64,000 nt of DNA, from positions 620,001 through 684,000 of the forward strand of contig OZ218950.1 of assembly GCA_965112735.1 (NCBI GenBank), read 5' to 3'. This DNA is from Phaeosaccion multiseriatum. Taxonomy: Eukaryota > Protista > Ochrophyta, other classes. A program made the position numbers and the translations under genes. Shown here piece after piece: positions 2,571 through 53,552 of this stretch. Within the stretch, counting starts at the first letter, position 1; each line of letters starts with the position of its first letter. The notes under the pieces are model-generated. The model did not search any database and was not told the origin of the DNA. It was given only the letters and a program-made list of their open reading frames with translations.

Positions 2571-3859
2571 CTAAATCTCAAGTCCCGAGGTATCAGCAGC
2601 AGGGCCCTCCACACGCACGCATGCTCGCAGCGCCTTCCGTCCGCGTATCTTCTTCTCACTCGCCGTCACCATGCTCTCCTCCAGCACCGCCCACTCCTCC
2701 TTCAGCTTGTCGTCATCATCATCCTCCCCTACTTCTCCTGAGCGATAGCGGTGGTAGGCAGACACAAAGCCTCTGATCGTGCTCTCCAGGCTCGCCCCTT
2801 CCTCTTTGTGCGCACAGCGAGGTGGGGCAGCAGCAACACTTTACTCCGGCTCACAGCCACCACCACGCCATTGGAAAGCTCCCTGTCCCGACGGCCGCAG
2901 AAGGCCGTGGCAGCATCAGCCCCGCTATCTTCCAGCCCTCTCCACAGGCCACAGGGCAGCTGAATCTCATCCCCGACATGAAGCCCCAGCCCCGCAAGCA
3001 AACCCACCCCATTCCCATCCTCCAGTGCCTCCTTCCTCTCCTCCTCTCCCCCAGGCATTGAAGGGGCGCATTTTGCCCTCTTGCTTCCTCTCCCATTGAT
3101 GTCCTCCGCAGCTCCTCGCTTGGGCACAGGCGTACAACGGGCAATCTCCTCCTTCTGCTCCGCTCCCTCCCTCTTCACTCGTGCATGCCTCAGGCACATC
3201 CCACCTTGCTTCCGCTGCTTATCGCACCCCTCAACAGTACACCTCTTCCGCACAGCTCCATGGGCCTGGCAAAGTCCTCCTTGGACCCGCTGCTTGTCGC
3301 ACCCCTCAACAGTACACCTCTTAACGACAGCTCCATGGCCCTGGCAAAGTCCTCCTTGGATCCGCTGCTTGTCGCACCCCTCAACAGTACACCCCTTCCG
3401 CACAGCCCCGTGGGCCAGGCAAAGTCCTCCCTGTTGCGACTGCTTGTTGCACCCCTCCACACTACACCTCTTCACCACAGCTCCATGGCCCTGGCAAAGT
3501 CCCCCCCGCTTCGGGTGCTTGTCGCACCCCTCAACAGTACACCTCTTCACCACAGCCCCGTGCTCAAGGCAAAGTCCTCCTTGGATCCGTACCTTATCGC
3601 ACCCCTCAACAGTACACCTCTTCCGCACAGCTCCATGGCCCTTGCAAAGTCCTCCCTGTTGCGACTGCTTCTCGCAACCCTCAACAGTACACCCCTTCGG
3701 TACCTTCACAGCCCCGTGGGCCAGGCAAAGTCCTCCCTGTTGCGACTGCTTCTCGCACCCCTCAACCGTACACCTCTTCACCACAGCTCCGTGGGCCTGG
3801 CAAAGTCCTCCCTGTCGCGACTGCTTCTCGCACCCCTCAACAGTACATCTCTTCCGCAT
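2571..3859 (-). CDS. WRKY19-like zinc-finger repeat protein, copy 1 (9 repeats; 1-bp deletion in a C-run near 2797 shifts the C-terminus)
   Basis: Nine KRCTVEGC[DE]KxxxQGGLCxxHG units. First ATG at 3859. ctcgcccctt here versus ctcgccccctt in other copies, which could be a real or a sequencing indel. Confidence 0.85.
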
Positions 3860-4376
3860 TCTCACAACTCCGCGCCCTTCAAACAATCCTCCTTGCACCT
3901 CCTTCGCGTTTCTTCAAAACAATACAAGTGCTCCCCCGTGGACAAGAAGGCTCTTACAGCCCTTCCTTCACTGTCTGTCGTGGTCAAGAGAAGAGAGAGA
4001 AGTCGAATGCTTATGTGCCAAGTTCAAGGCCTCCAACCCGCGCATCGGCTGAAGACAAAGGAGGATAGATCCCCTTGCGTCCAGCCCAAGTCTTGGAGAA
4101 GAGGAGGAGAGAAGGTTGTAAAAGAGGATAATCAAAAGAGGGAAGAGAGGGGAAGATATTTCTTAAGGGATGGGAGGGAGAGAAACAAAAAACAAAATGA
4201 AGGCGCTTTATATTTTTCAATTTCAGCGTATTGGATCCTGGACGAGGAGCCCAGCTCGGAGTCCCACAGAGCTCCCCCCCGCAAACACTCTCCGAGGGGT
4301 TCGGGGCTTTACGAGGCCCAAAGACTGAGGACGATACAACGCTTGCCTTGTGTCAAGAACAAGAGCTTCCTCACAA

Positions 4377-5123
4377 CTACTCTTCCGGCTGCCCATCTGC
4401 TGCTACTGCCGCTGTATCACCAACTGCTGTGTCACCACCACTGGCGAGGGCGGCCTTGTGATCATGGAGGTGTATAACGGCCTTCCCGTCGTCCACGTGT
4501 CCCTTCATCAGGCAAATTACCTCCCCATGCGGCCACGTGTTGCTCAGACCGGCCACCAGCTGGGGCAGGATGGGATGGCAGTGGATGGGGATGACGGGAC
4601 CGGGGGGGGGGGGGGGAAGGGGAATCAAAGGGGGGCGGGGGGGGAGGGGCGAAGGAGAGAGAGGATGAGTGCTTTCACTTCGAGGTGGAAGAGAAGGACA
4701 TGGAGGGAGAGAGAGAGAGAGTTATCCCTCCATCATACAACTGCCGACGGCTTAGCGCTAAGCAGGTGGTGATACATAGCATATGTATAGTAGTTGGTGA
4801 TACATTACATGCGCTAACATGAGTCTACCCAGGCTTAAAGAAAGACTACATACCTCGCCAAGGAAGGAGCGCAACGCGGCCCCGCACGTACTTCCCGCGG
4901 GCCATCCACTGCCATCCCCCTCCCCCTTCTCCCCCTCCTCTTCCTCCTCCTGCTCCTCCTCCTCCTCCTCCTCCTCCTCCTCCTCCTCCTCCTCCTCCTC
5001 CTCCCCCGCCCCTGTGTCCACGCTCTCGGTGACCATGGTCTGTCCCCCCGCAGCAACGCTGTCGGCCACACGCGCGAGGGCTTCCCAGAAGTCGAACAGC
5101 GTCAGGACTCCGTTCTGGGGTGG

Positions 5124-5173
<50 letters not shown>

Positions 5174-7533: not shown

Positions 7534-7579
<46 letters not shown>

Positions 7580-7919
7580 GTGTGCTGTTGTATCGCCAAC
7601 TGCAGCATCACTAGGTGCCCCTCTGGAGGTGATGCTGTTGCTGGAGGAGTTCTGAGCCGTGGCCTTGCGTTCCAAACCCTTCCCAGGGGGCCCTCTTACG
7701 CCGCCGTTTGTGACACTAGGACCACTGCAAGTAGTGGTCACGTTGTTGTTCGTGCTCGTGTTGGTGATACTCCCACGCCGCAGCAGACCCCCTGTGCCAT
7801 CACTACCCGCCCCTGCTCGTCCGTACATGAGGCCATCCAAGGCCAGCTCCCATGGTCTGTTTGGGTCTCCTCCTCCTGCGATACCCAAGCCGCCCCCCCC
7901 CACTGCTTCGAGACCGCTC
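4377..7919 (-). CDS. Gene B: 5'-truncated 7-exon gene, unknown protein (exons 7919-7232, 6952-6863, 6730-6203, 6017-5920, 5523-5412, 5114-4854, 4559-4377)
   Basis: All six introns are GT-AG and phase-compatible, giving one continuous reading (e.g. ALWK|VYPINN, DWGS|LLAHAG, RDE|NGVLTLFDFWEALARVAD, FLGE|LVAGL...QPEE*). Branch point tgactaac before exon D. The first exon starts at an acceptor with no upstream exon in the unit. Confidence 0.8.
7021..7110. repeat. (CCTT)n intronic microsatellite, representative of the (CA)n, (CCCT)n, (GCGT)n and (GGA)n tracts in gene B introns
   Basis: Seen directly. Tract lengths vary between units. Confidence 0.95.
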
Positions 7920-8067
7920 CTGGGAGGGGGGTGAACTTCAATCGGCCGTCTCTCTTCCCAGGGGGGCACGACAAAGCCGACGAAGGGGCAGGGAGGGGGG
8001 CGTGGCGCTCCCTCCCCACTCTCTCTACTGTCTCTCTTGTTGTGATGAGAGGAAGTCAGAGTGATAG

Positions 8068-8612: not shown

Positions 8613-9608
8613 CTAAATCCCAAGTCCCGAGGTATCAGCAGCAGGGCCCTCCACACGCACGCACGCTCGCAGCGCCTTCCGTCCGCGCCTCTTCTTCTCA
8701 CTCGCCGTCACCATGCTCTCCTCCAGCACCGCCCACTCCTCCTTCAGCTTGTCGTCATCATCATCCTCCCCTACTTCTCCTGAGCGATAGCGGTGGTAGG
8801 CAGACACAAAGCCTCGGATCGTGCTCTCCAGGCTCGCCCCCTTCCTCTTTGTGCGCACAGCGAGGTGGGGCAGCAGCAACACTTTACTCCGGCCCACAGC
8901 CACCACCACGCCATTCGATAGCTCCCTGCCCCGACGACCGCAGAAGGCCGTGGCAGCATCAGCCCCGCCATCTTCCGGCCCTCTCCACAGGCCACACGGC
9001 AGTTGAATCTCGTCCCCGGCATGAAGCCCCAGCCCCGCAAGCAAACCCACCCCATTTCCATCCTCCAGTGCCTCCTTCCTCTCCTCCCCTCCCCCAGGCA
9101 TTGAAGGGGCGCATTTTGCCCTCTTGCTTCCTCTCCCATTGACGTCCTCCGGAGCTCCTCGCTTGGGCACAGGCGTACGACGAGCAATCTCCTCCTTCTG
9201 CTCCGCTCCCTCCCTCTTCACTCGTGCATGCCTCTGGCACATCCCCCCTTGCTTCCGATGCTTCTCGCACCCCTCAACAGTACACCTCTTCCGTACCACC
9301 ACCGCTCCGTGAGCCACGCAAAGTCCTCCTTGGATCCGCTGCTTCTTGCAACCCTCAACAGTACACCTCTTGGTCACAGCCCCATGCCCTTTGCAAAGTC
9401 CTCCGCGTTGCGACTCCTTCTCGCACCCCTCAACAGTACACCTCTTCCGTACCACCACAGCCCCGTGGCCCTTGCAAAGCCCTTCTCGGACCCGTTGCTT
9501 GTCGCACCCCTCAACAGTACACCTCTTCACCACAGCTCCATGGGCCTGGCAAAGTCCCCCCTGCTTCGGGCGCTTGTCGCAACCCTCAACAGTACATCTC
9601 TTCCGCAT
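8613..9608 (-). CDS. WRKY19-like zinc-finger repeat protein, copy 2 (5 repeats, intact)
   Basis: Open ORF with variable windows RPK, QRV, ESQ, QRI, HRK and the full C-terminal domain. Confidence 0.88.
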   Translation of the reverse strand: MRKRCTVEGCDKRPKQGGLCQAHGAVVKRCTVEGCDKQRVREGLCKGHGAVVVRKRCTVEGCEKESQRGGLCKGHGAVTKRCTVEGCKKQRIQGGLCVAHGAVVVRKRCTVEGCEKHRKQGGMCQRHARVKREGAEQKEEIARRTPVPKRGAPEDVNGRGSKRAKCAPSMPGGGEERKEALEDGNGVGLLAGLGLHAGDEIQLPCGLWRGPEDGGADAATAFCGRRGRELSNGVVVAVGRSKVLLLPHLAVRTKRKGASLESTIRGFVSAYHRYRSGEVGEDDDDDKLKEEWAVLEESMVTASEKKRRGRKALRACVRVEGPAADTSGLGI

Positions 9609-11137: not shown

Positions 11138-12508
11138 CTAAATCCCAAGTCCCGAGGTATCAGCAGCAGGGCCCTCCACACGCACGCACGCTCGCAGCGC
11201 CTTCCGTCCGCGACTCTTCTTCTCACTCGCCGTCACCATACTCTCCTCCAGCACCGCCCACTCCTCCTTCAGCTTGTCGTCATCATCATCCCCCCCTGCT
11301 CCTCCTGAGCGATAGCGGCGGTAGGCAGACACAAAGCCTCGGATCGTGCTCTCCAGGCTCGCCCCCTTCCTCTTTGTGCGCACAGCGAGGTGGGGCAGCA
11401 GCAACACTTTACTCCGGCCCACAGCCACCACCACGCCATTCGATAGCTCCCTGTCCCGACGGCCGCAGAAGGCCGTGACAGCATCAGCCCCGCCATCTTC
11501 CAGCCCTCTCCACAGGCCACAGGGCACTTGAATCTCGTCCCCGACATGAAGCCCCAGCCCCGCAAGCAAACCCACCCCATTCCCATCCTCCAGTGCCTCC
11601 TTCCTCTCCTCCCCTCCCCCAGCCATTGAAGGGGCGCATTTCGCCCTCTTCCTTCCTCTCCCATTGATGTCCGTCGCAGCTCCTCGCTTGGGCACAGGCG
11701 TACAACGGGCAATCTCCTCCTTCTGCTCCGCTCCCTCCCTCTTCACTCGTGCATGCCTCTTGCACATCCCCCCTTGCTTCCGTTGCTTTTCGCACCCCTC
11801 AACAGTACACCTCTTCCGTACCACCACCGCTCCGTGAGCCACGCAAAGTCCTCCTCGGACCCGTACCTTATCGCACCCCTCAACAGTACACCTCTTCCGC
11901 ACAGCCCCATGGGCCTGGCAAAGTCCTCCCTGCCTCGGGTGCTTGTCGCACCCCTCAACAGTACACCTCTTCACCACAGCTCCATGGCCCTGGCAAAGTC
12001 CCCCCTGCTTCGGGTGCTTGTCGCACCCCTCAACAGTACACCTCTTCACCACAGCCCCGTGCTCAAGGCAAAGTCCTCCTTGGATCCGTACCTTATCGCA
12101 CCCCTCAACAGTACACCTCTTCACCACAGCTCCATGGGCCTGGCAAAGTCCTCCCTGTTGCGACTGCTTCTCGCACCCCTCAATAGTACAACTCTTCACC
12201 ACAGCCCCGTGGGCCTGGCAAAGTCCTCCCTGTCGCGACTGCTTCTCGCACCCCTCAACAGTACACCTCTTCACTACGGCTCCATGGCCCTGGCAAAGTC
12301 CTCCCTGTTGCGACTGCTTCTCGCACCCCTCAACAGTACACCTTTTCGGTACCACCACAGCCCCGTGGGCCTGGCAAAGTCCTCCTTGCTGCCGATGCTT
12401 CTCGCACCCCTCAACATTACACCTCTTCCGCACAGCTCCATGGCCCTGGCAAAGTCCTCCCTGCTTCGGGTGCTTGTCGCAACCCTCAACAGTACACCTC
12501 TTCCGCAT
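11138..12508 (-). CDS. WRKY19-like zinc-finger repeat protein, copy 3 (10 repeats, intact)
   Basis: Open ORF with windows HPK, HRQ, QSQ, QSR, QSQ, VRI, HPK, HPR, VRV, QRK. Confidence 0.88.
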   Translation of the reverse strand: MRKRCTVEGCDKHPKQGGLCQGHGAVRKRCNVEGCEKHRQQGGLCQAHGAVVVPKRCTVEGCEKQSQQGGLCQGHGAVVKRCTVEGCEKQSRQGGLCQAHGAVVKSCTIEGCEKQSQQGGLCQAHGAVVKRCTVEGCDKVRIQGGLCLEHGAVVKRCTVEGCDKHPKQGGLCQGHGAVVKRCTVEGCDKHPRQGGLCQAHGAVRKRCTVEGCDKVRVRGGLCVAHGAVVVRKRCTVEGCEKQRKQGGMCKRHARVKREGAEQKEEIARCTPVPKRGAATDINGRGRKRAKCAPSMAGGGEERKEALEDGNGVGLLAGLGLHVGDEIQVPCGLWRGLEDGGADAVTAFCGRRDRELSNGVVVAVGRSKVLLLPHLAVRTKRKGASLESTIRGFVSAYRRYRSGGAGGDDDDDKLKEEWAVLEESMVTASEKKSRGRKALRACVRVEGPAADTSGLGI

Positions 12509-16533: not shown

Positions 16534-17954
16534 CTGGGAGGGGGGTGAACTTCAATCGGCCGTCTCTCTTCCCAGGGGGGCACGACAAAGCCGACGAAGG
16601 GGCAGGGAGGGGGGCGTGGCGCTCCCTCCCCACTCTCTCTACTGTCTCTCTTGTTGTGATGAGAGGAAGTCAGAGTGATAGAAGGAGCGCAGCGCGGCCC
16701 CGCACGTACTTCCCGCGGGCCATCCGCTGCCATCTCCCTCCCCCTCCTCCTCCCCCTCCTCCCCCGCCCCTGTGTCCATGGTCTATCCCCCCTCAGCAAC
16801 GCCCACACGGGCGAGGGATTCGAATGAACAACAGTGTGTCTATGGATGACTCAGGGATTAGTAGCAGCTCCTCTCACTCTCAGGAGGATGCTGGTGCCGG
16901 GCCCGTGCTGGGCGGTGCTGACTCGGAGTGAGCCCCTACCTCGCGCGAACGAAATCTTGAGCCCTCATTTACACTCTTGTTTGTAAAGAAACTCACCACT
17001 GCACGTGGAAATACATCAAAATTCACACACAGCACATTCAGAAGCTCCCAAGTCTCAGTTACTCGGCCCCTTCCACAGCAGTGAAGCGATGTGGGTGGCG
17101 ACTGTTTTCATCAAGGTCCATCACGTGTATTGACTTACTCTACTCTTCACGCCCATTGCACACACCAAGCCTCAAGCTTCACCACGGCGAAGGCGATACG
17201 GCGGACGGAAGGCCATCGGGTCACTAAATCCCAAGTCCCGAGGTATCAGCAGCAGGGCCCTCCACACGCACGCACGCTCGCAGCGCCTTCCGTCCGCGCC
17301 TCTTCTTCTCACTCGCCGTCACCATGCTCTCCTCCAGCACCGCCCACTCCTCCTTCAGCTTGTCGTCATTATCATCCTCCCCTACTCCTCCTGAGCGAAA
17401 GCGGTGGTAGGCAGACACAAAGCCTCGGATCGTGCTCTCCAGGCTCGCCCCCTTCCTCTTTGTGCGCACAGCGAGGTGGGGCAGCAGCAACACTTTACTC
17501 CGGCCCACAGCCACCACCACGCCGTTCGATAGCTCCCTGTCCCGACGGCCGCAGAAGGCCGTGACAGCATCAGCCCCGCCATCTTCCAGCCCTCTCCACA
17601 GGTCGCAGGGCACTTGAATCTCGTCCCCGACATGAAGCCCCAGCAAGCAAACCCACCCCATTCCCATCCTCCAGTGCCTCCTTCCTCTCCTCCCCTCCCC
17701 CAGCCATTGAAGGGGCGCATTTCGCCCTCTTCCTTCCTCTCCCATTGATGTCCGTCACAGCTCCTCGCTTGGGCACAGGCGTACAACGAGCAATCTCCTC
17801 CTTCTGCTCCGCTCCCTCCCTCTTCACTCGTGCATGCCTCTGGCACATCCCACCTTGCTTCCGAAGCTGCTCGCACCCCTCAACAGTACACCTCTTCGCC
17901 ACAGCTCCATGGGCCAGGCAAAGTCCTCCTCTGACACGATGCTTGTCGCACTCC

Positions 17955-18421
17955 CCCGGCACCGCCCCTCTGACGGTGCCGCGCACACTCCAACCCACCC
18001 GATTCTCTATCTCCCCGCGGTAGATACCAATGGGTATCCCTCGAATATCTCCCCACTGAGTCCACCAGTCCCCCGGGGCGGGTGGGTGGGAGAAGATTCA
18101 CCGCGTTAGCTGCTTTCAGGGCAGCGACTCCTATCCTCACTTCCACTCCACCGCACCACACCACGGACCTCTTATGCCACACCCTCAAGTTTCTAAACCT
18201 CCCCCTCCCTTGCCAGTCCGTGAAAAGTCGTTTTCCCACCGGGGTACGAAAACTCCCCTTTCACGGCCTTCTCGGTCGGGTACCTCCCCACATTCACAAA
18301 TGCCCACACAATAGTATTACAATTAGGTAAAAGGGGGTACTTGCCAGTCGGAAGTTAGAGAGGAGGACGAGTCTTTGCGCACCCGGCACCGCCCCTCTGA
18401 CGGTGCCGCGCACACTCCAAC
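17955..18421 (-). repeat. Ngaro-like split direct repeats (B1-A2-B2) at the 3' end of the first copy; same arrangement at 20387-20882
   Basis: A ~70-bp block gttagagaggaggacgagtctttgcgcacccggcaccgcccctctgacggtgccgcgcacactccaac occurs at ~18353-18421, 20387-20455 and 20813-20882, and partially at 17955-17994. It contains the stem cggcaccg/cggtgccg. Confidence 0.75.
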
Positions 18422-18503
18422 TCAACTGGAATTCCAGTCCCTCAACTCGTCCCTCCGGCTCGCCTCTCCCCCCCATCACCTTCCCCTCCCCCCCACTATC
18501 CCA

Positions 18504-19724
18504 TTACACTCCGCATCCCCAGTCTTTGTCTGCCCCCGCCTCCTTCACCCCCAAACCCTGGTCCCACATCCTCGCCCCCCCTACTGTAACAATATCCCCC
18601 CTTCGCGCTAGTATCTCCGACACCCTATCCGACTCCTGCACGTTCGGCCGGATGTACCGCATGAACGCCTTGCTCTTCCACCTCCCTTCCACTTGAATCG
18701 TCGAATCTGACGCCCCCCTTGCTGCTAGTGTCGTTGCACCCCCAACACGAAAAGAATGCAGCGCATGTCCTGAGGGATCAAGTCCCAAGGCCGACCCCAC
18801 CCTCCTCATCTCCTTCGAGACCTCCGTCCGTTTGAAGCACGTCCAGCCGCCCTTACCCCACCACGCTGACAGTGGCAGCGTGCCCGTGACCTGACCCCTC
18901 CCTTCGCCTTCGTCCTGTAAGTCCAAGACGCGCTGAATAAGCTCCAAGGCCCCTTTTCCCTTGTCCACTCGCCTCCTACACAGCACCGCTCCCACCCTCA
19001 TCTGATCGCCCTTTGACCCTTTGAATCGTATCTCCACCCTGTCCGCCATGTGCCGGTACTTCAATGTGACTCTGCAGCTCCCCTTGAAGAAGTGGAGATC
19101 CTCTCGCGTCAGACCAAAAGTTGGATGGACCTTCCCCGTTTCATCGTAACCCCACAGTTCACTGGCACGTAGCAGAAAGAAGTAGGATAGACCCATACCA
19201 CACCACATTGCCTCCCCTCTCACCCCCACACCCACATTCCCCTCCACTGACTAGAGCATGTCCCACGTGAACGGCTGTCGCACGGTGTTCATCCCCTTGC
19301 TCCCCATCCCCTGTTGCCTCTTCATTCCCTTCTTCGTCGCAGCCACCAGATAATGTGAGGTCGGCAGCTCCACACCCCTCATCATCCGGTGGTAGTACGC
19401 CACTCCCGAGATTTTCGATGCCACCGTGTCGACAGCATCTCCCATCTCCGCGAATCGGTATGCAGCGAACGCCGAAACAATCTCAGCTGCACGACCTTCG
19501 TCCACATTCTTCTCAATCCACACCCCCATCCCCACCGCTTCACAGTACTTCACCCACGCCCTCCAATGTGACGTATATGCTCCTTGAGACCCCGGCGCAA
19601 TTGCTGCTCGTGCATACTGTCGCGCAAGGTCCGTGTACAAAGCTCGTTTGCCTCCTTCCCCAGCTCCAAGCGCCGCCAGCTCCTCCCCCCTTTGCCCCTT
19701 GCTCGTTGATCCTCTGAATTGCAC
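18504..19724 (-). pseudogene. DIRS-type tyrosine recombinase with an in-frame TAG at 19251-19253
   Basis: ORFs 19251-19724 (N-terminal SQGAYTSHWRAWVKYC...) and 18504-19247 (catalytic domain) share one frame. Confidence 0.88.
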
Positions 19725-20260
19725 TCAGATTATCTCCCCTGGCCAACACCGGTGCTCCCTTCTTCTCCCCCTTGATCCCCAACTGAACCACCACCAGCTC
19801 CGCCATCACCACCATCGCCAACAGTTCCAGGAGGTTGATTGACACCCTCCGATGATTGGCCAGCTTGTCTCCACCATCACCCTCCTCCCCCACGAAACGT
19901 CCTTCCATGCTCACTCCGTCGACCTCCTCCATCCCCAACCTCCACCACCAGCCCAGCTCCTCACAATAGCCTCCAATTGCCTGCTTTGATGCGTCCGTGT
20001 ACCACGCCATCACCGAACCACTTCCCACTCTCCAGCGCCACCATCACTTGCCGAAAAGCTGACTTGACATCCAGTTTGCTCAAGACGATGTGCTGCCCCG
20101 GGTATTTCGCCCGAAGACACCACACCAGCTCGATGAGAGCCCGAAGTACCCCGCCGCACAAGCTCTCGGGCAAACTATCCGCCGACGACCGAGCATTGAT
20201 GCTCGCCGCGCCAAAAGTCAGGTTCCGAGCCTTCCCCTCTTCCCACCGTCGCTGCATGCT
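19700..20260 (-). pseudogene. Internally deleted DIRS RT / RNase H remnant
   Basis: LPESLCGGVL...KLDVKSAFRQV is joined by deletion to WYTDASKQAIGGY...INLLELLAMV...GDNLSAI. Confidence 0.8.
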
Positions 20261-20966
20261 AGTCAACACGCCTGAGCTCCCACCCCAATGCCCCCTGCAC
20301 CAGGCCCCTCCCCAGTACCCACTGTACCAAGGCCCACAGACCGCACCCCAATGCTCCCTGCACCATGCCACGCCCCAGTACCGACGAGTTAGAGAGGAGG
20401 ACGAGTCTTTGCGCACCCGGCACCGCCCCTCTGACGGTGCCGCGCACACTCCAACCCACCCGATTCTCTATCTCCCCGCGGTAGGTACCAATGGGTACCC
20501 CTCGAATATCTCCCCACTGAGTCCACCAGTCCCCCGGGGCGGGTGGGTGGGAGAAGATTCACCGCGTTAGCTGCTTTCAGGGCAGCGACTCCTATCCTCA
20601 CTTCCACTCCACCGCACCACACCACGGACCTCTTATGCCACACCCTCAAGTTTCTAAACCTCCCCCTCCCTTGCCAGGCCGTGAAAAGTCGTTTTCCCAC
20701 CGGGGTACGAAAACTCCCCTTTCACGGCCTTCTCGGTCGGGTACCTCCCCCCATTCACAAATGCCCACACAATAGTATTACAATTAGGTAAAAGGGGGTA
20801 CTTGCCAGTCGGAAGTTAGAGAGGAGGACGAGTCTTTGCGCACCCGGCACCGCCCCTCTGACGGTGCCGCGCACACTCCAACTCAACTGGAATTCCAGTC
20901 CCTCAACTCGTCCCTCCGACTCGCCTCTCCCCCCCCATCACCTTCCCCTCCCCCCCCACTATCCCA

Positions 20967-22049
20967 TTACACTCCGCATCCCCAGTCTTTGTCTGCCCCC
21001 GCCTCCCTCACCCCCAAACCCTGGTCCCACGTCCTCGCCCCCCCTACTGTAACGATATCCCCCCTTCGCGCTAGTATCTCCGACACCCTATCCGACTCCT
21101 GCACGTTCGGCCGGATGTACCGCATGAACGCCTTGCTCTTCCACCTCCCTTCCACTTGAATCGTCGAATCTGACGCCCCCCTTGCGGCTAGTGTCGTAGC
21201 ACCCCCAACTCGAAAGGAATGCAGCGCATATCCTGATGGATCAAGTCCCAAGGCCGACACCACCCTCCTCATCTCCTTCGAGACCTCCGTCCGTTTGAAG
21301 CACGTCCAGCCGCCCTTACCCCACCACGCTGACAGTGGCAGCGTGCCCGTGACCTGACCCCTCCCTTCGCCTTCGTCCTGTAAGTCCAAGACGCGCTGAA
21401 TGAGCTCCAATGCCCCTTTTCCCTTGTCCACTCGCCTCCTACACAGCACCGCTCCCACCCTCATCTGATCGCCCTTTGACCCTTTGAATCGTATCTCCAC
21501 CCTGTCCGCCATGTGCCGGTACTTCAACGTGACTCTGCAGCTCCCCTTGAAGAAGTGGAGATCCTCTCGCGTCAGACCAAAAGTTGGATGGACCTTCCCC
21601 GTTTCATCGTAACCCCACAGTTCACTGGCACGTAGCAGCAAGAAGTAGGATAGACCCATTCCACACCACATTGCCTCCCCTCTCACCCCCACACCCACAT
21701 TCCCCTCCACTGACCTCTTCCGTACTACCACAGCTCCATGGGCCTGGCAAAGTCCTCCTTGGACCCGTACCTTATCGCACCCCTCAACAGTACACCTCTT
21801 CCGTACCACCACCGCTCCGTGCCCTTTGCAAAGTCCTACCCGTTGCGACTCCTTCTCGCACCCCTCAACAGTACACCTCTTCCGCACAGCTCCATGGGCC
21901 TGGCAAAGTCCTCCTTGGACCCGTACCTTATCGCACCCCTCAACAGTACACCTCTTCACGACAGCCCCGTGGGCCACGCAAAGTCCTCCTTGGACCCGAT
22001 GCTTGTCGTACACCAGCCAGCAGACAGCGAGACCATCAGCACACAGCAT
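20967..22049 (-). CDS. Chimeric ORF: zinc-finger repeats fused in frame to a complete tyrosine-recombinase catalytic domain
   Basis: Continuous ORF ...AHGAVVVRKR|SVEGNVG...LLRASEL...SKGDQ...YALHSFRVGG...GRWKS...RYIRP. In-frame ATG at 22049. Expression is not shown. Confidence 0.55.
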   Translation of the reverse strand: MLCADGLAVCWLVYDKHRVQGGLCVAHGAVVKRCTVEGCDKVRVQGGLCQAHGAVRKRCTVEGCEKESQRVGLCKGHGAVVVRKRCTVEGCDKVRVQGGLCQAHGAVVVRKRSVEGNVGVGVRGEAMWCGMGLSYFLLLRASELWGYDETGKVHPTFGLTREDLHFFKGSCRVTLKYRHMADRVEIRFKGSKGDQMRVGAVLCRRRVDKGKGALELIQRVLDLQDEGEGRGQVTGTLPLSAWWGKGGWTCFKRTEVSKEMRRVVSALGLDPSGYALHSFRVGGATTLAARGASDSTIQVEGRWKSKAFMRYIRPNVQESDRVSEILARRGDIVTVGGARTWDQGLGVREAGADKDWGCGV

Positions 22050-22321
22050 AGCAACCACAGTTAGTCACGCCTTGTCACCCGCACCACCCACAGTAGGCTA
22101 GTTCACATATCACCTCCACCACCTCACTCCTTCCCACACCCCTTCATCTCCTCCTCCCCCCTTCACTCCCTTCCCATTCCCCATTATCCTCTACTCTACC
22201 ACCCTTACCATCCTCTTCCCCTCCACCTCACGCTCCATCAATACCACACATACACGCATCTACACATGGTTACAACTTACCTCGAGCGCTCCAATACTGA
22301 GCCCATAAGCTCTAATATACA
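22009..22321 (+). mobile_element. Severely 5'-truncated CRE-like non-LTR copy (3' UTR only), TSD TGTCG
   Basis: Identical to ~59986-60298. tgtcg at 22004-22008 and 22322-22326. Confidence 0.92.
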
Positions 22322-23253
22322 TGTCGCACCCCTCCACAGAACACCCCTTCACCACAGCCCCGTGGGCCAGGCAAAGTCCTCCCTGCTTCGGTTGCTTGTC
22401 GCACCCCTCAACAGTACACTTCTTCCGCACAGCTCCATGGGCCACGCAAAGTCCTCCTTGGATCCGCCGCTTGTCGCACCCCTCAACAGTACACCTCTTG
22501 GTCACAGCCCCGTGGGCCACGCAAAGTCCTCCTTGGATCCGCAGCTTGTCGCACCCCTCAACAGTACACCTCTTCACCACAGCTCCATGGCCCTGGCAAA
22601 GTCCTCCTTGGATCCGATGCTTGTCGCACCCCTCAACAGTACAACTTTTCACCACAGCTCCATGGGCCTGGCAAAGTCCTCCCTGTCGCGACTGCTTCTC
22701 GCACCCCTCAACAGTACACCCCTTCCGCATTCTCACAACTCCGCGCCCTTCAAACAATCCTCCTTGCACCTCCTTCGCGTTTCTTCAAAAGCATATACGC
22801 CCACCCCCGTGGACAAGAAGGCTCTTACAGCCCTTCCTTCACTGTCTGTCGTGGTCAAGAGGAGAGAGAGAAGTCGAATGCTTATGTGCCAACTTGAAGG
22901 CCTCCAAGCCCGCGCATCGACTGAAGACAAAGGAGGATAGATCCCCTTAGGCCCAGCCCAAGCGGTCTTGGAAAAGAAGAGGACAGAAGGTTGTAAAAGA
23001 GAATATTCAAGACCGGGATGTGAGGGGAATACACTTCTTAGGGAGGAGAGGGAGAGAAAGAAGGATGTGTGAAGGCCGGGGCCCAGGAACATGCGATCTA
23101 GTTTCAGTTTCAGCTTAGTGGATCTGGACGAGGAGCTCAGCTCGGAGTCCCACAGAGCAAACACTCCCGACGGGTTCTTGGGGCTTTACGAGGCCCAAAG
23201 ACTGAGGACGATACAACGCTTGCCTTGTGTCAAGAACAAGAGCTTCCTCACGA

Positions 23254-28684: not shown

Positions 28685-28870
28685 TGTTGCGATATCTCCT
28701 CTACGATGACAGGGACAAGCTAGAGTAGTGTCAACTCGTGTATTAATAATACCTACTGAGAGATGCGTTCAAGGAAGTGATGGCCGTGGCCATACATGAA
28801 CATCGATATCCACATCGATATTGTACGTCGATATAGTGCTCAGTCACAAATGGCGATACTTATCACAACA
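28685..28870 (-). repeat. Copia 3' LTR (186 bp)
   Basis: Identical by eye to 33903-34088. A short purine tract aggaggg precedes it on the minus strand. Confidence 0.95.
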
Positions 28871-29007
28871 CCCTCCTATGACTGAATCACTATCTCTCTT
28901 GATAGCTGACACTCTACCACAAACACGATGAGGAAACACCTGACTTGCCCTAAAACCCCCCCGAGACAAAGTCCTGAAAACCTCATACTAAAACTACTGA
29001 ACTAAAA

Positions 29008-33789: not shown

Positions 33790-33902
33790 GGCTAACGAAA
33801 GGACTCCTTCTCTCTCACTTGAGTTATCCGACCAAAACTCGCCTGTGTGCCGTCGCCGACTACGTAGAACCAGCTAGCTGTGAAGTGTCGCGACAGCTGT
33901 CG

Positions 33903-34088
33903 TGTTGCGATATCTCCTCTACGATGACAGGGACAAGCTAGAGTAGTGTCAACTCGTGTATTAATAATACCTACTGAGAGATGCGTTCAAGGAAGTGATG
34001 GCCGTGGCCATACATGAACATCGATATCCACATCGATATTGTACGTCGATATAGTGCTCAGTCACAAATGGCGATACTTATCACAACA
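33903..34088 (-). repeat. Copia 5' LTR (186 bp)
   Basis: Identical by eye to 28685-28870. Confidence 0.95.
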
Positions 34089-34775
34089 ACACCTCTTCCG
34101 TACCACCACAGCACCGTGGGCCACGCAAAGTCCTCCTTGGACCCGATGCTTGTCGCACCCCTCAACAGTACACCTCTTCATCACAGCTCCATGGCCCTTG
34201 CAAAGTCCTCCCCGTTGCGAATGCTTCTCGCACCCCTCAACAGTACATCTCTTCCGCATTCTCACAACTCCGCGCCCTTCAAACAATCCTCCTTGCACCT
34301 CCTTCGCGTTTCTTCAAAAGAATACAAGTGCTCCCCCGTGGACAAGAAGGCTCTTACAGCCCTTCCTTCACTGTCTGTCGTGGTCAAGAGAAGAGAGAGA
34401 AGTCGAATGCTTATGTGCCAAGTTGAAGGCCTCCAACCCGCGCATCGGCTGAAGACAAAGGAGGATAGATCCCCTTGCGTCCAGCCCAAGCGGTCTTGGA
34501 GAAGAGGAGGAGAGAAGGTTGTAAAAGAGGATAATCAAAAGAGGGAAGAGAGGGGAAGATATTTCTTAAGGGATGGGAGGGAGAGAAAGAAGGATGGGTG
34601 AAGGGGGGGAATCGGAAATCGAGTTTCAGTTTCAGCGTATTGGATCTGGACGAGGAGCCCAGCTCGGAGTCCCACAGAGCAAACACTCCCGACGGGTTCT
34701 TGGGGCTTTACGAGGCCCAAGGACTGAGGACGATACAATGCTTGCTTTGTGTCAAGAACAAGAGCTTCCTCACGA

Positions 34776-38975: not shown

Positions 38976-39890
38976 CTAAATCCCAAGTCCCGAGCTATCA
39001 GCAGCAGGGCCCTCCACACGCACGCACGCTCGCAGCGCCTTCCGTCCGCGCCTCTTATTCTCACTCGCCGTCACCATGCTCTCCTCCAGCACCGTCCACT
39101 CCTCCTTCAGCTTGTCGTCATCATCATCCTCCCCTACTTCTCCTGAGCGATAGCGGTGGTAGGCAGACACAAAGCCTCGGATCGTGCTCTCCAGGCTCGC
39201 CCCCTTCCTCTTTGTGCGCACAGCGAGGTGGGGCAGCAGCAACACTTTACTCCGGCCCACAGCCACCACCACGCCATTCGATAGCTCCCTGCCCCGACGG
39301 CCGCAGAAGGCCGTGGCAGCATCAGCCCCGCCATCTTCCAGCCCTCTCCACAGGTCGCAGGGCAGTTGAATCTCGTCCCAGACATGAAGCCCCAGCCCCG
39401 CAAGCAAACCCACCCCATTCCCATCCTCCAGTGCCTCCTTCCTCTCCTCCCCTCCCCCAGGCATTGAAGGGGCGCATTTTGCCCTCTTGCTTCCTCTCTC
39501 ATTGATGTCCTCCGCAGCTCCTCGCTTGGGCACAGGCGTACACGGGGCAATATCCTCCTTCTGCTCCGCTCCCTCCCTCTTCACTCGTGCATGCCTCTTG
39601 CACATCCCACCTTGCTTCCGTTGCTTCTCGCACCCCTCAACAGTACACCTTTTCGGTACCACCACAGCCCCGTGGGCCACGCAAAGTCCTCCCTGTCGCG
39701 ACTGCTTCTCGCACCCCTCAACAGTACACCCCTTCACCACAGCCCCGTGGGCCTGGCAAAGTCCTCCCTGTCGCGACTGCTTCTCGCACCCCTCAACATT
39801 ACACCTCTTCCGCACAGCTCCATGGGCCTGGCAAAGTCCTCCCTGCTTCGGGTACTTGTCGCACCCCTCAACAGTACATCTCTTCCGCAT
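38976..39890 (-). CDS. WRKY19-like zinc-finger repeat protein, copy 6 (4 repeats, intact)
   Basis: Windows YPK, QSR, QSR, QRK and the full C-terminal domain. Confidence 0.88.
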   Translation of the reverse strand: MRKRCTVEGCDKYPKQGGLCQAHGAVRKRCNVEGCEKQSRQGGLCQAHGAVVKGCTVEGCEKQSRQGGLCVAHGAVVVPKRCTVEGCEKQRKQGGMCKRHARVKREGAEQKEDIAPCTPVPKRGAAEDINERGSKRAKCAPSMPGGGEERKEALEDGNGVGLLAGLGLHVWDEIQLPCDLWRGLEDGGADAATAFCGRRGRELSNGVVVAVGRSKVLLLPHLAVRTKRKGASLESTIRGFVSAYHRYRSGEVGEDDDDDKLKEEWTVLEESMVTASENKRRGRKALRACVRVEGPAADSSGLGI

Positions 39891-43555: not shown

Positions 43556-43586
<31 letters not shown>

Positions 43587-44982: not shown

Positions 44983-45014
<32 letters not shown>

Positions 45015-46781: not shown

Positions 46782-47921
46782 CTAAATCCCAAGTCCCGAG
46801 GTATCAGCAGCAGGGCCCTCCACACGCACGCACGCTCGCAGCGCCTTCCGTCCGCGACTCTTCTTCTCACTCGCCGTCACCATGCTCTCCTCCAGCACCG
46901 TCCACTCCTCCTTCAGCTTGTCGTCATCATCATCCTTCCCTACTTCTCCTGAGCGATAGCGGTGGTAGGCAGACACAAAGCCTCGGATCGTGCTCTCCAG
47001 GCTCGCCCCCTTCCTCTTTGTGCGCACAGCGAGGTGGGGCAGCAGCAACACTTTACTCCGGCCCACAGCCACCACCACGCCATTCGATAGCTCCCTGCCC
47101 CGACGGCCGCAGAAGGCCGTGGCAGCATCAGCCCCGCCATCTTCCAGCCCTCTCCACAGGTCACACGGCAGTTGAATCTCGTCCCCGACATGAAGCCCCA
47201 GCCCCGCAAGCAAACCCACCCCATTCCCATCCTCCAGTGCCTCCTTCCTCTCCTCCCCTCCCCCAGGCATTGAAGGGGCGCATTTTGCCCTCTTGCTTCC
47301 TCTCCCATTGATGTCCTCCGCAGCTCCTCGCTTGGGCACAGGCGTACAACGGGCAATCTCCTCCTTCTGCTCCGCTCCCTCCCTCTTCACTCGTGCATGC
47401 CTCTTGCACATCCCACCTTGCTGCCGTTGCTTGTCGCACCCCTCAACAGTACACCCCTTCACCACAGCCCCATGCCCAACGCAAAGTCCTCCCTGTTTCG
47501 ACTGCTTCTCGCACCCCTCAACAGTACACCTCTTCACCACAGCCCCGTGGGCCAGGCAAAGTCCTCCTTGGACCCGATGCTTGTCGCACCCCTCAACAGT
47601 ACACATCTTCCGCACAGCTCCATGGGCCTGGCAAAGTCCTCCCTGTCGCGACTGCTTGTCGCACCCCTCAACAGTACACCTTTTCGGTACCACCACAGCC
47701 CCGTGGGCCACGCAAAGTCCTCCCTGTCGCGACTGCTTCTCGCACCCCTCAACAGTACACCCCTTCACCACAGCCCCGTGGGCCTGGCAAAGTCCTCCCT
47801 GTCGCGACTGCTTCTCGCACCCCTCAACATTACACCTCTTCCGCACAGCTCCATGGGCCTGGCAAAGTCCTCCCTGCTTCGGGTACTTGTCGCACCCCTC
47901 AACAGTACATCTCTTCCGCAT
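46782..47921 (-). CDS. WRKY19-like zinc-finger repeat protein, copy 7 (7 repeats, intact)
   Basis: Windows YPK, QSR, QSR, QSR, HRV, QSK, QRQ. Confidence 0.88.
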   Translation of the reverse strand: MRKRCTVEGCDKYPKQGGLCQAHGAVRKRCNVEGCEKQSRQGGLCQAHGAVVKGCTVEGCEKQSRQGGLCVAHGAVVVPKRCTVEGCDKQSRQGGLCQAHGAVRKMCTVEGCDKHRVQGGLCLAHGAVVKRCTVEGCEKQSKQGGLCVGHGAVVKGCTVEGCDKQRQQGGMCKRHARVKREGAEQKEEIARCTPVPKRGAAEDINGRGSKRAKCAPSMPGGGEERKEALEDGNGVGLLAGLGLHVGDEIQLPCDLWRGLEDGGADAATAFCGRRGRELSNGVVVAVGRSKVLLLPHLAVRTKRKGASLESTIRGFVSAYHRYRSGEVGKDDDDDKLKEEWTVLEESMVTASEKKSRGRKALRACVRVEGPAADTSGLGI

Positions 47922-51059: not shown

Positions 51060-51090
<31 letters not shown>

Positions 51091-52099
51091 TGGGTCCTGA
51101 CCTTGTTCATGACTGCGATGAAGACTCTCTCGAGCTCATTGGCAAGCTGCTTGGGGGCCTCGGGACACACACACTGCGTGAACAGCAGGAACTGGGGGGG
51201 GTATGGCAGTGGATGGGGAGGAGGAGCAGCAGGAGGAGGAGCAGCAGTTGGTTATAGAGCAGAGTGGAAACATCCCCTTTCCTTCCTTCCTTCCTTCCTT
51301 TCTTCTGTCACTTGCTCCCGACCATTTGATGTGCTCCCATCCACTGCCATCCCTCCCCCTGTCCACCCCTCTCCCTCCCTCCCTCCCTCTCTCCCCACCC
51401 TTCCTTCTCCCTCACCTGCTCGCGACTCAATTGATATGCCCCGGACACCGGCTCGCCCGTAGTGCCCCCTAAGCTCACAAAGTGATCAAAGGTACTTAAT
51501 ATCATCTTGAACGAAGCCCTCAGCACCCCCTCCACCTCCATGGACTCCTCCTCCACGGTTGCCTCTCCACTCGAGACGCGCTTGTTGCCCGACGCCACGA
51601 ACCTCCACCACCGATCGTGCATCAACACCCGGGACCAGGTCACTGTGAAACGGTGGGCCATGACCCCGTCGGCTCGGTTATACACGTCACCCGCGCCTCT
51701 CTTGCACCCTCCTCCTCCTCCTCCTCCTCCTCCTCCTCCTCCTCCTGCTGCTGCTGCTGCTTGTGCTGTTGTATCGCCAACTGCAGCATCACTAGGTGCC
51801 CCTCTGGAGGTGATGCTGTTGCTGGAGGAGTTCTGAGCCGTGGCCTTGCGTTCCAAACCCTTCCCAGGGGCCCTCTTGCGCCGCCATTTGTGACAATAGG
51901 ACCACTGCAAGTAGTGGTCACGTTGTTGTTCGTGCTCGTGTTGGTGATACTCCCACGCCGCAGCAGACCCCCTGTGCCATCACTACCCGCCCCTGCTCGT
52001 CCGTACATGAGGCCATCCAAGGCCAGCTCCCATGGTCTGTTTGGGTCTCCTCCTCCTGCGATACCCAAGCCGCCCCCCCCCACTGCTTCGAGACCGCTC
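48630..52099 (-). pseudogene. Gene B copy with a 1-bp deletion in exon A (~51868)
   Basis: cccaggggccctc here versus cccagggggccctc elsewhere. This is a homopolymer and may be a sequencing error. Confidence 0.65.
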
Positions 52100-52740
52100 C
52101 TGGGAGGGGGGTGAACTTCAATCGGCCGTCTCTCTTCCCAGGGGGGCACGACAAAGCCGACGAAGGGGCAGGGAGGGGGGCGTGGCGCTCCCTCCCCACT
52201 CTCTCTACTGTCTCTCTTGTTGTGATGAGAGGAAGTCAGAGTGATAGAAGGAGCGCAGCGCGGCCCCTTACGTACTTCCCGCGGGCCATCCGCTGCCATC
52301 TCCCTCCCCCTCCTCCTCCCCCTCCTCCCCCGCCCCTGTGTCCATGGTCTATCCCCCCTCAGCAACGCCCACACGGGCGACGGATTCGAACGAGCAACAG
52401 CGTGTCTATGGATGATTCAGGGATTAGTAGCAGCTCCTCGCACTCTCAGGAGGATGCTGCGAACGAAATCTTGAGCCCTCATTTACACTCTTGTTTGTAA
52501 AGAAACTCACCACTGCACGTAGAAATACATCAAAATTCACACACAGCACGTTCATAAGCCCCCAAGTCACAGTTATTCGGCCCCTTCCACAGCAGTGAAG
52601 CGATGTGGGTGGCGACTGTTTTCATCAAGGTCCATCACGTGTATTGACTTACTCTACTCTTCACACCCATTGCACACACCAAGCATCAAGCTTCACCACG
52701 GCGAAGAAAACGGTGAGGCGGACGGAAGGCCATCGGGTCA

Positions 52741-53552
52741 CTAAATCCCAAGTCCCGAGCTATCAGCAGCAGGGCCCTCCACACGCACGCACGCTCGCAG
52801 CGCCTTCCGTCCGCGCCTCTTCTTCTCACTCGCCGTCACCATGCTCTCCTCCAGCACCGCCCACTCCTCCTTCAGCTTGTCGCCATCATCATCTTCCCCT
52901 ACTTCTCCTGAGCGATAGCGGTGGTAGGCAGACACAAAGCCTCGGATCGTGCTCTCCAGGCTCGCCCCCTTCCTCTTTGTGCGCACAGCGAGGTGGGGCA
53001 GCAGCAACACTTTACTCCGGCCCACAGCCACCACCACGCCATTCGATAGCTCCCTGCCCCGACGGCCGCAGAAGGCCGTGGCAGCTTCAGCCCCGCCATC
53101 TTCCAGCCCTCTCCACAGGTCACACGGCAGTTGAATCTCGTCCTCGACATGAAGCCCCAGCCCCGAAAGCAAACCCACCCCATTCCCATCCTCCAGTGCC
53201 TCCTTCCTCTCCTCCCCTCCCCCAGGCATTGAAGGGGCGCATTTTGCCCTCTTGCTTCCTCTCCCATTGATGTCCTCCGCAGCTCCTCGCTTGGGCACAG
53301 GCGTACAACGGGCAATCTCCTCCTTCTGCTCCGCTCCCTCCCTCTTCACTCGTGCATGCCTCTTGCACATCCCATCTAGCTTCCGTTGCTTTTCGCACCC
53401 CTCAACAGTACACCTCTTCCGCACAGCTCCATGGGCCTGGCAAAGTCCTCCTTGGACCCGTACCTTATCGCACCCCTCAACAGTACACCTCTTCACCACC
53501 GCTCCGTGAGCCAGGCAAAGTCCTCCTTGGACCCGTACCTTATCGCACCCCT
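52741..53552 (-). pseudogene. Zinc-finger gene copy 8, 3' part, interrupted by CRE-like insertions
   Basis: C-terminal domain plus about 3 repeats. Further single repeats at 60299-60380 and 61329-61410. Confidence 0.88.

What the first reader, a model, noticed from the sequence alone, without database searches (positions are those of the whole stretch)
2571..53552. Tandem zinc-finger genes with a PRDM9/TALE-like hypervariable repeat code
Seen: copies carry 9, 5, 10, ~11, 8, 4, 7 and at least 3 repeats. The scaffold KRCTVEGC[DE]K-xxx-QGGLCxxHG is nearly fixed. The three residues after K vary (QSR, QSQ, VRI, HPK, QRI, QRV, QRK, RPK, ESQ, HRQ, HRV, YPK, LRI, RRI, QSK...), and the same modules recur in different order in different copies. 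Flanks and the C-terminal domain are nearly identical. Inference: the repeats are modular specificity units, possibly for nucleic acid, shuffled by unequal exchange to give each paralog a different recognition sequence. This could be a TE-recognition or recombination-targeting repertoire. WRKY19-like repeats are known from plants and oomycetes, but I know of no established recognition code for them.
Basis: partly seen in the sequence, partly recalled or inferred. Interest (0 to 1): 0.8.

Follow-up and report, generated by a model that had tools for sequence, protein, structure and literature searches.

The report
Fast-changing zinc-finger array gene family
An alga carries dozens of neighbouring gene copies that are nearly identical, except that each has a different string of small zinc fingers varying at about seven positions; this pattern suggests a set of modular, probably DNA-reading, proteins, but neither binding nor expression has been shown.

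Summary
The window holds eight minus-strand genes in ~5.5 kb tandem units that are 90-97% identical. Each starts with 4-10 copies of a 25-residue C-x4-C-x9-C-x2-H finger (Pfam Zf_WRKY19), then an NLS-like linker and a ~145-residue domain with no detectable relatives elsewhere. Four genes are intact, one is frameshifted and three are split by mobile elements.

Variation sits at finger positions 7, 9, 10, 11, 17, 18 and 23. pN/pS there is 1.4-1.7, against 0.12-0.18 in the scaffold. One hundred finger pairs with identical scaffold DNA still differ at about 6 of the 21 variable-codon bases. Genes whose C-terminal DNA differs by 1-2% have about 90% different arrays. In an unrelated four-finger orthologue group, positions 9, 10, 11 and 17 are fixed within a finger and differ between fingers.

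So the evolutionary pattern resembles PRDM9 and KRAB zinc-finger genes and is real. Nucleic-acid binding is only inferred, from the basic arrays, the NLS-like motif and relatives fused to GIY-YIG or HNH nucleases. Expression could not be tested. A TE-recognition or recombination role has no direct support.

The genome has at least 63 stop-free copies in several clusters. This scan noted the same family before on other stretches of this genome (s1-360297, s1-336308, s1-338424).

The parts
2729..3859 (-). Gene 1: ATG at 3859, 9 fingers (array about 3241-3847), C-terminal domain frameshifted near 2800. Probably a pseudogene, or an assembly indel.
   Evidence: the C-terminal match is split into two frames at window about 2574-2810 and 2789-3184
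8613..9608 (-). Gene 2: intact ORF of 331 aa with 5 fingers.
11138..12508 (-). Gene 3: intact ORF of 456 aa with 10 fingers. Zf_WRKY19 E = 2.8e-59.
16829..22784 (-). Gene 4, broken. The 5' array runs 22784-22323 (5 fingers plus an interrupted one). A 315-bp insertion follows at about 22007-22322. Three more fingers lie at 22006-21715, then a tyrosine-recombinase element at 17956-21714. The rest of the gene (17955-16829) is itself frameshifted.
27630..34313 (-). Gene 5, broken. Two fingers (34313-34062) and 6 fingers plus the C-terminal domain (28700-27630) are separated by a Copia-type LTR retrotransposon (28701-34061, 5-bp target duplication GGTGT).
   Evidence: (RVT_2 E = 2e-42)
38976..39890 (-). 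Gene 6: intact ORF of 304 aa with 4 fingers.
46782..47921 (-). Gene 7: intact ORF of 379 aa with 7 fingers. Its first three fingers are the same as in gene 6.
52741..53552 (-). Gene 8, truncated: C-terminal domain plus at least 3 fingers. The array is cut at 53552/53553 by a non-LTR retrotransposon lying on the + strand.
38979..39590 (-). Example of the C-terminal part: a bipartite NLS-like motif (KR-x10-SKRAK) and a ~145-aa orphan domain, conserved at 61-65% between the C1 and C13 subfamilies.

Best explanation
These are members of a young, expanding and decaying family of probably nuclear proteins. Each protein is an array of minimal Cys3-His zinc fingers (Pfam Zf_WRKY19: knuckle, beta-hairpin, short helix), capped by a conserved last finger and followed by an NLS-like linker and a lineage-specific C-terminal domain. 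Shown here: the finger scaffold is kept nearly identical at the DNA level and is under purifying selection. About seven positions, on the hairpin after Lys8 (9-11), in the turn between Cys16 and His19 (17-18), at position 7 and in the linker (23), are hypervariable and change mostly non-synonymously. Finger number and order turn over much faster than the rest of the gene. Inferred: the arrays are rebuilt by unequal crossing-over and short-tract gene conversion among tandem paralogues drawing on an old pool of finger variants. The variable residues are the ligand-contacting ones. The ligand is most likely DNA (less likely RNA), read modularly so that each paralogue has its own target. The C-terminal domain would act as an effector or oligomerisation module.
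For: The domain assignment is strong: Zf_WRKY19 scores 196.9 bits against a cut-off of 27, with C1, C6, C16 and H19 invariant in 156 fingers. Entropy is concentrated at positions 7, 9-11, 17, 18 and 23 in two subfamilies whose C-terminal parts are 61-65% identical. pN/pS at variable codons is 1.44 (bootstrap 1.26-1.62) and 1.71 (1.51-1.96), against 0.12 and 0.18 in the scaffold. One hundred finger pairs with identical 54-nt scaffolds differ at about 5.8 of 21 variable-codon bases. Gene pairs with 1-2% C-terminal DNA divergence have a normalised array edit distance of 0.90. Identical units occur at shifted positions and higher-order periods of 150-231 nt are present. In 22 four-finger orthologues from other organisms, positions 9, 10, 11 and 17 have within-finger entropy of 0.00-0.32 but differ between fingers. 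The AF2 model of four fingers has pLDDT 84.7. The arrays are basic, with pI 9.2-9.7 and net charge +12 to +25, and the bipartite NLS-like motif is conserved in both subfamilies. An ATG with A at -3 lies four codons before the first Cys in both subfamilies, although the upstream sequences are unrelated. Finger relatives are fused to GIY-YIG nuclease domains (P0088, P0107) and lie under HNH endonuclease annotations in phages. One array also passes the Pfam cut-off for the CxC6 cluster of KDZ transposases. At least 63 stop-free C-terminal domains sit in clusters on C1, C8, C13 and C2.
Against: No binding data exist for this finger class, and no paper names the domain. No RNA run held the stretch, and the runs that were laid are DNA contigs, so expression is untested. 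Four of the eight genes in the window are broken. C-terminal dN/dS within the C1 cluster is 0.79, close to neutral. There is no significant structural match to any DNA-binding finger. The best single-finger look-alike is an A20-type ubiquitin-binding finger, and that match is not significant. The nuclease-fusion relatives are distant, at 25-40% identity driven largely by the Cys pattern. pN/pS was computed pairwise by Nei-Gojobori on recombining, non-independent repeats, not with a site model. Synonymous diversity is also raised inside the variable codons (pS 0.23 where the scaffold pS is 0). This fits an old reassorted variant pool at least as well as ongoing positive selection.
Confidence: 0.5

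Rival explanations
1. The arrays are protein-recognition arrays. Each finger would be an A20-like treble-clef module that binds ubiquitin or another protein surface, and the hypervariable family would be a repertoire for variable protein targets, for instance viral proteins.
For: The best single-finger structural look-alikes are A20-type fingers: 3vux_G at rmsd 0.7 A over 22 residues (TM 0.54 by target) and 2eqf. The ligand spacing C-x4-C-x9-C-x2-H is close to the A20 pattern C-x2-4-C-x11-C-x2-C (from my own knowledge). Hypervariable, clustered families near contig ends are typical of recognition repertoires.
Against: The Foldseek E-values of 4-6.7 are not significant, and no zf-A20 Pfam hit appeared at E <= 0.01. 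The strongly basic arrays and NLS-like motif and the nuclease fusions of relatives point to nucleic acid instead.
Confidence: 0.15
2. The family is mostly decaying tandem DNA. It would be amplified as part of a 5.5-kb segmental repeat in a TE-rich region near a contig end. The variable positions would then be merely unconstrained surface residues, with no paralogue-specific function.
For: Whole units, spacers included, are 90-97% identical. C-terminal dN/dS within C1 is 0.79. Four of eight copies are broken by TEs or a frameshift. No RNA evidence was found.
Against: Scaffold pN/pS is 0.12-0.18 in the same fingers. At least 63 copies have stop-free C-terminal domains. The same variable positions recur in the C13 subfamily, which has 2.4-kb spacing, and dN/dS there is 0.35. 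The variable positions are the most conserved, finger-specific ones in an orthologue group, so they are not unconstrained by nature. pN/pS above 1 exceeds what neutrality gives.
Confidence: 0.2
3. The gene belongs to, or derives from, a mobile element, with the fingers serving as a DNA-binding module like the CxC clusters of KDZ transposases. The clusters would then reflect element amplification.
For: One array scores 48.5 bits on Pfam CxC6 against a cut-off of 27.5. Copies occur on several contigs and in both orientations.
Against: No transposase, integrase or RT belongs to the unit itself. Those present are separate insertions with their own junctions. Copies are arranged head to tail in clusters with subfamily-specific scaffolds, which fits tandem duplication rather than dispersal. 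The CxC6 hit overlaps two Zf_WRKY19 fingers and is probably the same motif.
Confidence: 0.07

Closest known systems
PRDM9 and KRAB-type C2H2 zinc-finger array genes of animals
   Same: Both have tandem minisatellite-like finger arrays whose scaffold is homogenised at the DNA level. Both have a few hypervariable, mostly non-synonymous positions per finger and rapid change in finger number and order. The KRAB zinc-finger genes are also clustered, tandemly duplicated paralogues with birth-and-death turnover.
   Different: The finger class differs: 25 aa, Cys3-His, C-x4-C-x9-C-x2-H, with no zf-C2H2 Pfam hit and a best PDB profile E of 0.14. There is no KRAB, SET or SSXRD domain; the C-terminal domain has no detectable relatives. 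The host is an alga. DNA binding and a target class are unproven.
Pfam PF24906 Zf_WRKY19 proteins of oomycetes, diatoms and plants ('WRKY19-like zinc finger domain-containing', 'loricrin-like')
   Same: The finger is the same, scoring far above the Pfam cut-off. It is arrayed with a 25-residue period in many of these proteins.
   Different: The closest public proteins are at most 56% identical over the array, and none carries this C-terminal domain. I found no report of tandem paralogue clusters with hypervariable positions. For example, the four-finger group has fixed, orthologously conserved fingers.
TAL effector repeats
   Same: Near-identical tandem protein repeats with a short hypervariable slot, and arrays that differ in length and order between paralogues.
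   Different: TALE repeats are 33-35-aa helical hairpins without zinc and carry a proven one-repeat-one-base code. Here the fold is a zinc knuckle and no code is known. The variable slot spans about seven positions in two clusters, not two residues.
Homing endonucleases with modular DNA-binding tails (GIY-YIG, HNH)
   Same: Distant relatives of this finger occur as 4-5-finger arrays on GIY-YIG proteins (P0088, P0107) and next to or within HNH endonuclease genes of phages. In enzymes of this kind, such a tail is usually the DNA-binding part.
   Different: The window's genes have no nuclease domain, and similarity to those fingers is low.

Membership tests
Pfam PF24906 Zf_WRKY19 | Profile HMM score above the curated gathering cut-off (27 bits) | tested here: met
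   196.9 bits, E = 2.8e-59, 10 stretches for window:11138-12562:-. At least 909 candidate fingers in the genome, and all 150 that were scored pass the cut-off.
Pfam PF24906 Zf_WRKY19 | Invariant Cys-Cys-Cys-His ligand set with spacing C-x4-C-x9-C-x2-H | tested here: met
   C1, C6, C16 and H19 are invariant in the 106 + 50 canonical fingers, which were themselves selected by a pattern requiring these four ligands. They are also invariant in the alignment with 26 outside proteins.
Pfam PF24906 Zf_WRKY19 | Zinc binding by each finger | not testable with these tools
   The AF2 model is confident (pLDDT 84.7), but it has no metal and I could not read its coordinates.
PRDM9 / KRAB-ZFP type arrays | Classical C2H2 finger (C-x2-4-C-x12-H-x3-5-H, beta-beta-alpha) | tested here: not met
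   No zf-C2H2 Pfam hit. Best PDB profile hits to C2H2 arrays have E = 0.14-1.2. Foldseek E >= 0.67.
PRDM9 / KRAB-ZFP type arrays | KRAB, SET or SSXRD effector domain | tested here: not met
   No Pfam family for the C-terminal part. No homologues in two sequence searches.
PRDM9 / KRAB-ZFP type arrays | Homogenised scaffold with hypervariable, positively selected contact positions and rapid array turnover (the evolutionary mode, not membership) | tested here: met
TAL effector repeats | 33-35-aa helical repeat with a two-residue RVD and a one-repeat-one-base code | tested here: not met
   The repeat is 25 aa with a zinc-knuckle secondary structure. A code cannot be tested here.
A20-type zinc finger | C-x2-4-C-x11-C-x2-C treble clef; significant profile or fold match | tested here: inconclusive
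   Single-finger Foldseek matches (3vux_G rmsd 0.7 A over 22 aa; 2eqf) have E = 4-6.7. There is no Pfam zf-A20 hit. The spacing is x9 and the last ligand is His.
CxC6 cluster of KDZ transposases (PF18721) | Score above cut-off and linkage to a KDZ transposase | tested here: not met
   The score is met in one array (48.5 against 27.5 bits), but the hit overlaps Zf_WRKY19 fingers. No transposase was found in the unit ORFs tested.

The most novel reading that the evidence does not exclude
An algal lineage has independently evolved a programmable, modular DNA-recognition system on a minimal 25-residue Cys3-His finger. Residues 9-11 and 17-18 would specify the target, and dozens of paralogues near contig ends would be kept diverse by recombination and selection. 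The family could serve as a genome-defence or targeting repertoire analogous to KRAB zinc-finger proteins or PRDM9. Several mobile-element families would in turn use its invariant scaffold codons as their landing site.
Probability: 0.2. Interest if true: 0.85.

Novelty: new variant of a known kind. Interest (0 to 1): 0.62.

Why it matters
Rapidly diversifying finger arrays are so far described mainly for animal C2H2 proteins. Here the same evolutionary mode appears on a different, much smaller and unstudied zinc finger in an alga. If the variable residues do read DNA, this would be a second natural modular zinc-based recognition scaffold. Its positions to test are already defined (9-11 and 17-18), and more than 60 natural variants are available to decode it. 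It would also give a function to the widespread Zf_WRKY19 domain of oomycetes, diatoms and plants, for which I found no published characterisation. If the family proves silent, it is still a clear case of concerted evolution combined with site-specific TE attack on a coding repeat.

Tried and rejected
1. C-terminal domain. A word-based homologue search, a profile HMM search of 1.84 billion representatives, Pfam and the ESM Atlas feature search (best scores 0.89-0.90, unrelated families) gave nothing. AF2 on an 11-row alignment gave pLDDT 34, which is unusable.

2. Fold of the finger array. Foldseek against PDB gave no hit at E <= 0.001. VIA-align wide gave no chain with Z >= 2. The PDB profile search gave only weak C2H2 hits.

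3. Expression. The run search of kind rna returned four runs of one sample, none on record as RNA. Their contigs reach 221 kb, so they are DNA. The corrected 2.8-kb request showed only short unitigs. The higher summed depth over the CDS reflects copy number.

4. Loose ends at 39006-39009. I first considered a splice site. Their sequence translates to RSGLEL*, the C-terminus of the other subfamily, so they come from paralogues and are not a splice junction.

5. The 315-bp insert at 22007-22322. I considered an AT-AC intron or an introner, because it begins AT, ends AC and holds a GAG|GTAAGT site. I rejected both: no in-frame splice restores the finger, there is a 3-bp duplication (GAC), and an uninserted paralogue of one insertion exists (L019 7686-9134 against L020 3172-4947).

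6. The plus-strand ORFs over the arrays (for example 3185-4477) are low-complexity mirror frames with no conserved Cys/His pattern. I did not run them against Pfam.

I could therefore not read the C8 and C2 clusters, or the longer ORFs that carry distant relatives of the C-terminal domain (for example C13:570303-570845 in a 1312-aa open frame).

8. Spacer ORFs of the 5.5-kb unit (6044-6931, 4758-5165, 5754-6179, 7013-8194, all minus strand) gave no Pfam family above noise.
Full report
**What is there**

The window is G000:C1:620001-684000 of a 67-Mb, 22-contig genome with about 59% G+C. Earlier notes of this scan call the organism a stramenopile alga; I did not test that.

A six-frame motif scan found 47 fingers, all on the minus strand and spaced 75 nt apart (occasionally 81 nt). 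They fall into ten array segments, and Tandem Repeats Finder reports the same arrays.

A self-comparison shows that the arrays sit in a ~5.5-kb unit repeated head to tail at 90-97% identity.

Stop-to-stop translation gives eight genes:
- Four are intact: 8613-9608, 11138-12508, 38976-39890 and 46782-47921, with 5, 10, 4 and 7 fingers.
- One has a frameshifted C-terminus: 2729-3859, with 9 fingers.
- Three are interrupted by mobile elements.

**Gene anatomy**

Each protein starts MRKRC, and the ATG has an A at -3. The 61-65%-identical subfamily on contig C13 also has an ATG four codons before its first Cys (MPGVC). Its upstream sequence is unrelated, so I take this ATG as the start.

The fingers are 25 residues long (a few are 27) with the pattern C-x4-C-x9-C-x2-H. 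Pfam recognises them as Zf_WRKY19 (PF24906) at 196.9 bits against a cut-off of 27.

The last finger of every intact gene is a conserved cap (GGMC..HARVKRE). It is followed by a bipartite NLS-like motif (KR-x10-SKRAK) that is conserved in both subfamilies, and then by a ~145-residue domain.

That domain has no relative that I could detect. The word-based search found none, and a profile search of 1.84 billion representative proteins returned zero hits. It has no Pfam family, the Atlas features were uninformative and the AF2 model is unusable at pLDDT 34.

Within this genome there are at least 63 stop-free copies of the domain. About 36 lie on C1 between 80 and 770 kb, 11 on C13, 14 on C8 and 2-3 on C2. 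Weaker matches lie inside longer open frames that I could not fetch.

The finger itself is used widely in this genome. There are at least 909 candidate fingers, many in other large open frames.

**Is the variation special?**

I pooled 106 canonical fingers from the C1 cluster (the window plus eighteen 10-kb samples) and 50 from the C13 cluster.

- Shannon entropy is zero or near zero at most positions. It is high at positions 7, 9, 10, 11, 17, 18 and 23 in C1, and at 9, 10, 11, 17 and 23 in C13.
- Nei-Gojobori pN/pS summed over all finger pairs is 1.44 at the variable codons against 0.12 in the scaffold in C1. In C13 it is 1.71 against 0.18.
- Bootstrap intervals are 1.26-1.62 and 1.51-1.96 for the variable codons, against 0.09-0.16 and 0.14-0.22 for the scaffold.
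- The scaffold is almost monomorphic at the codon level, for example TGT 105/106, GAG 106/106 and CTT 103/106.
- One hundred finger pairs whose 54 scaffold bases are identical still differ at about 5.8 of the 21 variable-codon bases.

Two caveats apply. The pairs are not independent and the repeats recombine, so this is not a formal site model. Synonymous diversity is also raised inside the variable codons, which fits an old, reassorted pool of variants at least as well as fresh positive selection.

**Are they modules?**

Positions 7, 10 and 11 are tightly linked (mutual information z = 8-28). They define three classes: E-xS[QRK], D-xR[VI] and D-xPK. Positions 17, 18 and 23 assort nearly freely with them.

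This gives 29 distinct triplets but 80 distinct seven-position variable haplotypes among 106 fingers. The picture is therefore richer than a handful of modules being shuffled.

**Array turnover**

- Gene pairs whose C-terminal DNA differs by only 1-2% have a normalised array edit distance of 0.90.
- Identical 75-nt units occur at different array positions in different genes.
- Genes 38976-39890 and 46782-47921 share their first three fingers and then diverge.
- Higher-order periods of 150, 225 and 231 nt indicate block duplications.

This is what unequal crossing-over and gene conversion among tandem paralogues would produce.

**Do the variable positions matter functionally?**

Among the public relatives of the array there is a group of 22 proteins with four fixed fingers. 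In that group, positions 9, 10, 11 and 17 have within-finger entropy of 0.14, 0.32, 0.00 and 0.07. Their consensus residues nevertheless differ between fingers (RNVQ, VVAA, VKVI, ISIK). Position 7 is unconstrained there, with entropy 2.22.

The positions that are hypervariable here are therefore the ones that define finger identity where the array is stable.

The AF2 model of four fingers is confident (pLDDT 84.7). Its secondary structure places positions 9-11 in a hairpin after the Cys knuckle and 17-18 in the short helical turn between Cys16 and His19.

**What is the ligand?**

This is inference only.

In favour of nucleic acid:
- The arrays have pI 9.2-9.7 and a net charge of +12 to +25, and the NLS-like motif is conserved.
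- Two relatives carry GIY-YIG nuclease domains beside 4-5 fingers (P0088, P0107).
- Phage matches to the finger part lie under HNH endonuclease or Cys-rich protein annotations.
- One array also passes the cut-off of the CxC6 cluster known from KDZ transposases.

Against:
- There is no significant match to any solved DNA-binding finger.
- The best single-finger look-alike is an A20-type ubiquitin-binding finger, though that match is itself not significant.
- No paper in the library names this domain.

**Are the genes alive?**

Scaffold pN/pS of 0.12-0.18 and the many stop-free copies argue for function. C-terminal dN/dS is 0.35 within C13 and 0.53 between subfamilies, but 0.79 within the very young C1 cluster, where dS is about 0.04. 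Half of the window's copies are broken.

This is birth-and-death evolution with a high death rate.

Expression could not be tested. The only runs holding the stretch are DNA contigs of a single sample, and no RNA run was returned. I kept read laying under 6,000 letters.

**Comparison and verdict**

In evolutionary mode the family works like PRDM9 and the KRAB zinc-finger genes. It is not a member of those families: the finger is not C2H2, and there is no KRAB or SET domain. It is a member of Pfam Zf_WRKY19.

The TALE analogy holds only at the level of near-identical repeats with a variable slot. A TE-recognition or recombination-targeting role has no direct support here.

I rate it a new variant of a known kind. 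The same family was noted earlier in this scan on other stretches of the same genome (s1-360297, s1-336308, s1-338424), and my results agree with those notes.

Noticed in passing
window 22007-22322, 17956-21714, 53553 onward; also L004, L006, L009, L012, L014, L015, L017, L020: Three different mobile elements sit within the same nine bases (GAG GGG TGC GAC, codons 4-7) of a finger. They are a ~315-bp element with a 3-bp GAC duplication, a tyrosine-recombinase element and a non-LTR retrotransposon. The ~315-bp element's junction (...EGC[DE]MYIRAYGLSIGALEVSCNHV*) recurs in 9 arrays of the 264 kb sampled, behind different fingers and in both subfamilies. One uninserted paralogue exists (L019 7686-9134 against L020 3172-4947). 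These look like independent, site-specific insertions into the invariant scaffold. Other notes of this scan cover this.
   Followed up: partly
window 28701-34061: A Copia-type LTR retrotransposon (RVT_2 E = 2e-42, ORFs of 535, 704 and 322 aa) is inserted at codon 1 of a finger. It has a 5-bp target duplication GGTGT and TG...CA ends, and its long ORFs are open, so it looks young.
   Followed up: partly
window 17955-19251 and 20416-21714: Two 1.3-kb direct repeats (98.3% identical) bound the tyrosine-recombinase element. Each carries a weak Phage_integrase match, and the upstream one is fused in frame to three host fingers (ORF 20967-22064).
   Followed up: partly
window 53553-64000: Non-LTR retrotransposon copies on the + strand carry a RING finger (zf-RING_2, E = 2e-6) upstream of the reverse transcriptase. 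Segments at 57313-59902 and 61413-64000 are 99.8% identical, and a 1,038-bp tandem duplication is exact.
   Followed up: no
window 40339-40518, 48379-48492, 597-828: A 32-nt tandem repeat (3.6-7.4 copies) lies about 450 bp upstream of the start codons of some finger genes. Its copy number varies between units. It could be a promoter-proximal element or simply a minisatellite.
   Followed up: no
window 4000-8600 and the equivalent part of each unit: The spacer of the 5.5-kb unit is rich in microsatellites ((TCC)n, (CCTC)n, (TTCC)n, (AC)n). It holds minus-strand ORF pieces with non-repetitive stretches (6044-6931, 7013-8194, 4758-5165) that have no Pfam family. The C13 subfamily lacks this spacer, with genes 2.4 kb apart.
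   Followed up: partly
G000:C13:570303-570845, C13:316097-316570, C2:5709498-5709863: Weak matches (E = 1e-13 to 1e-15) to the orphan C-terminal domain lie inside much longer open frames (1312, 688 and 406 aa). They might reveal what the domain does.
   Followed up: no
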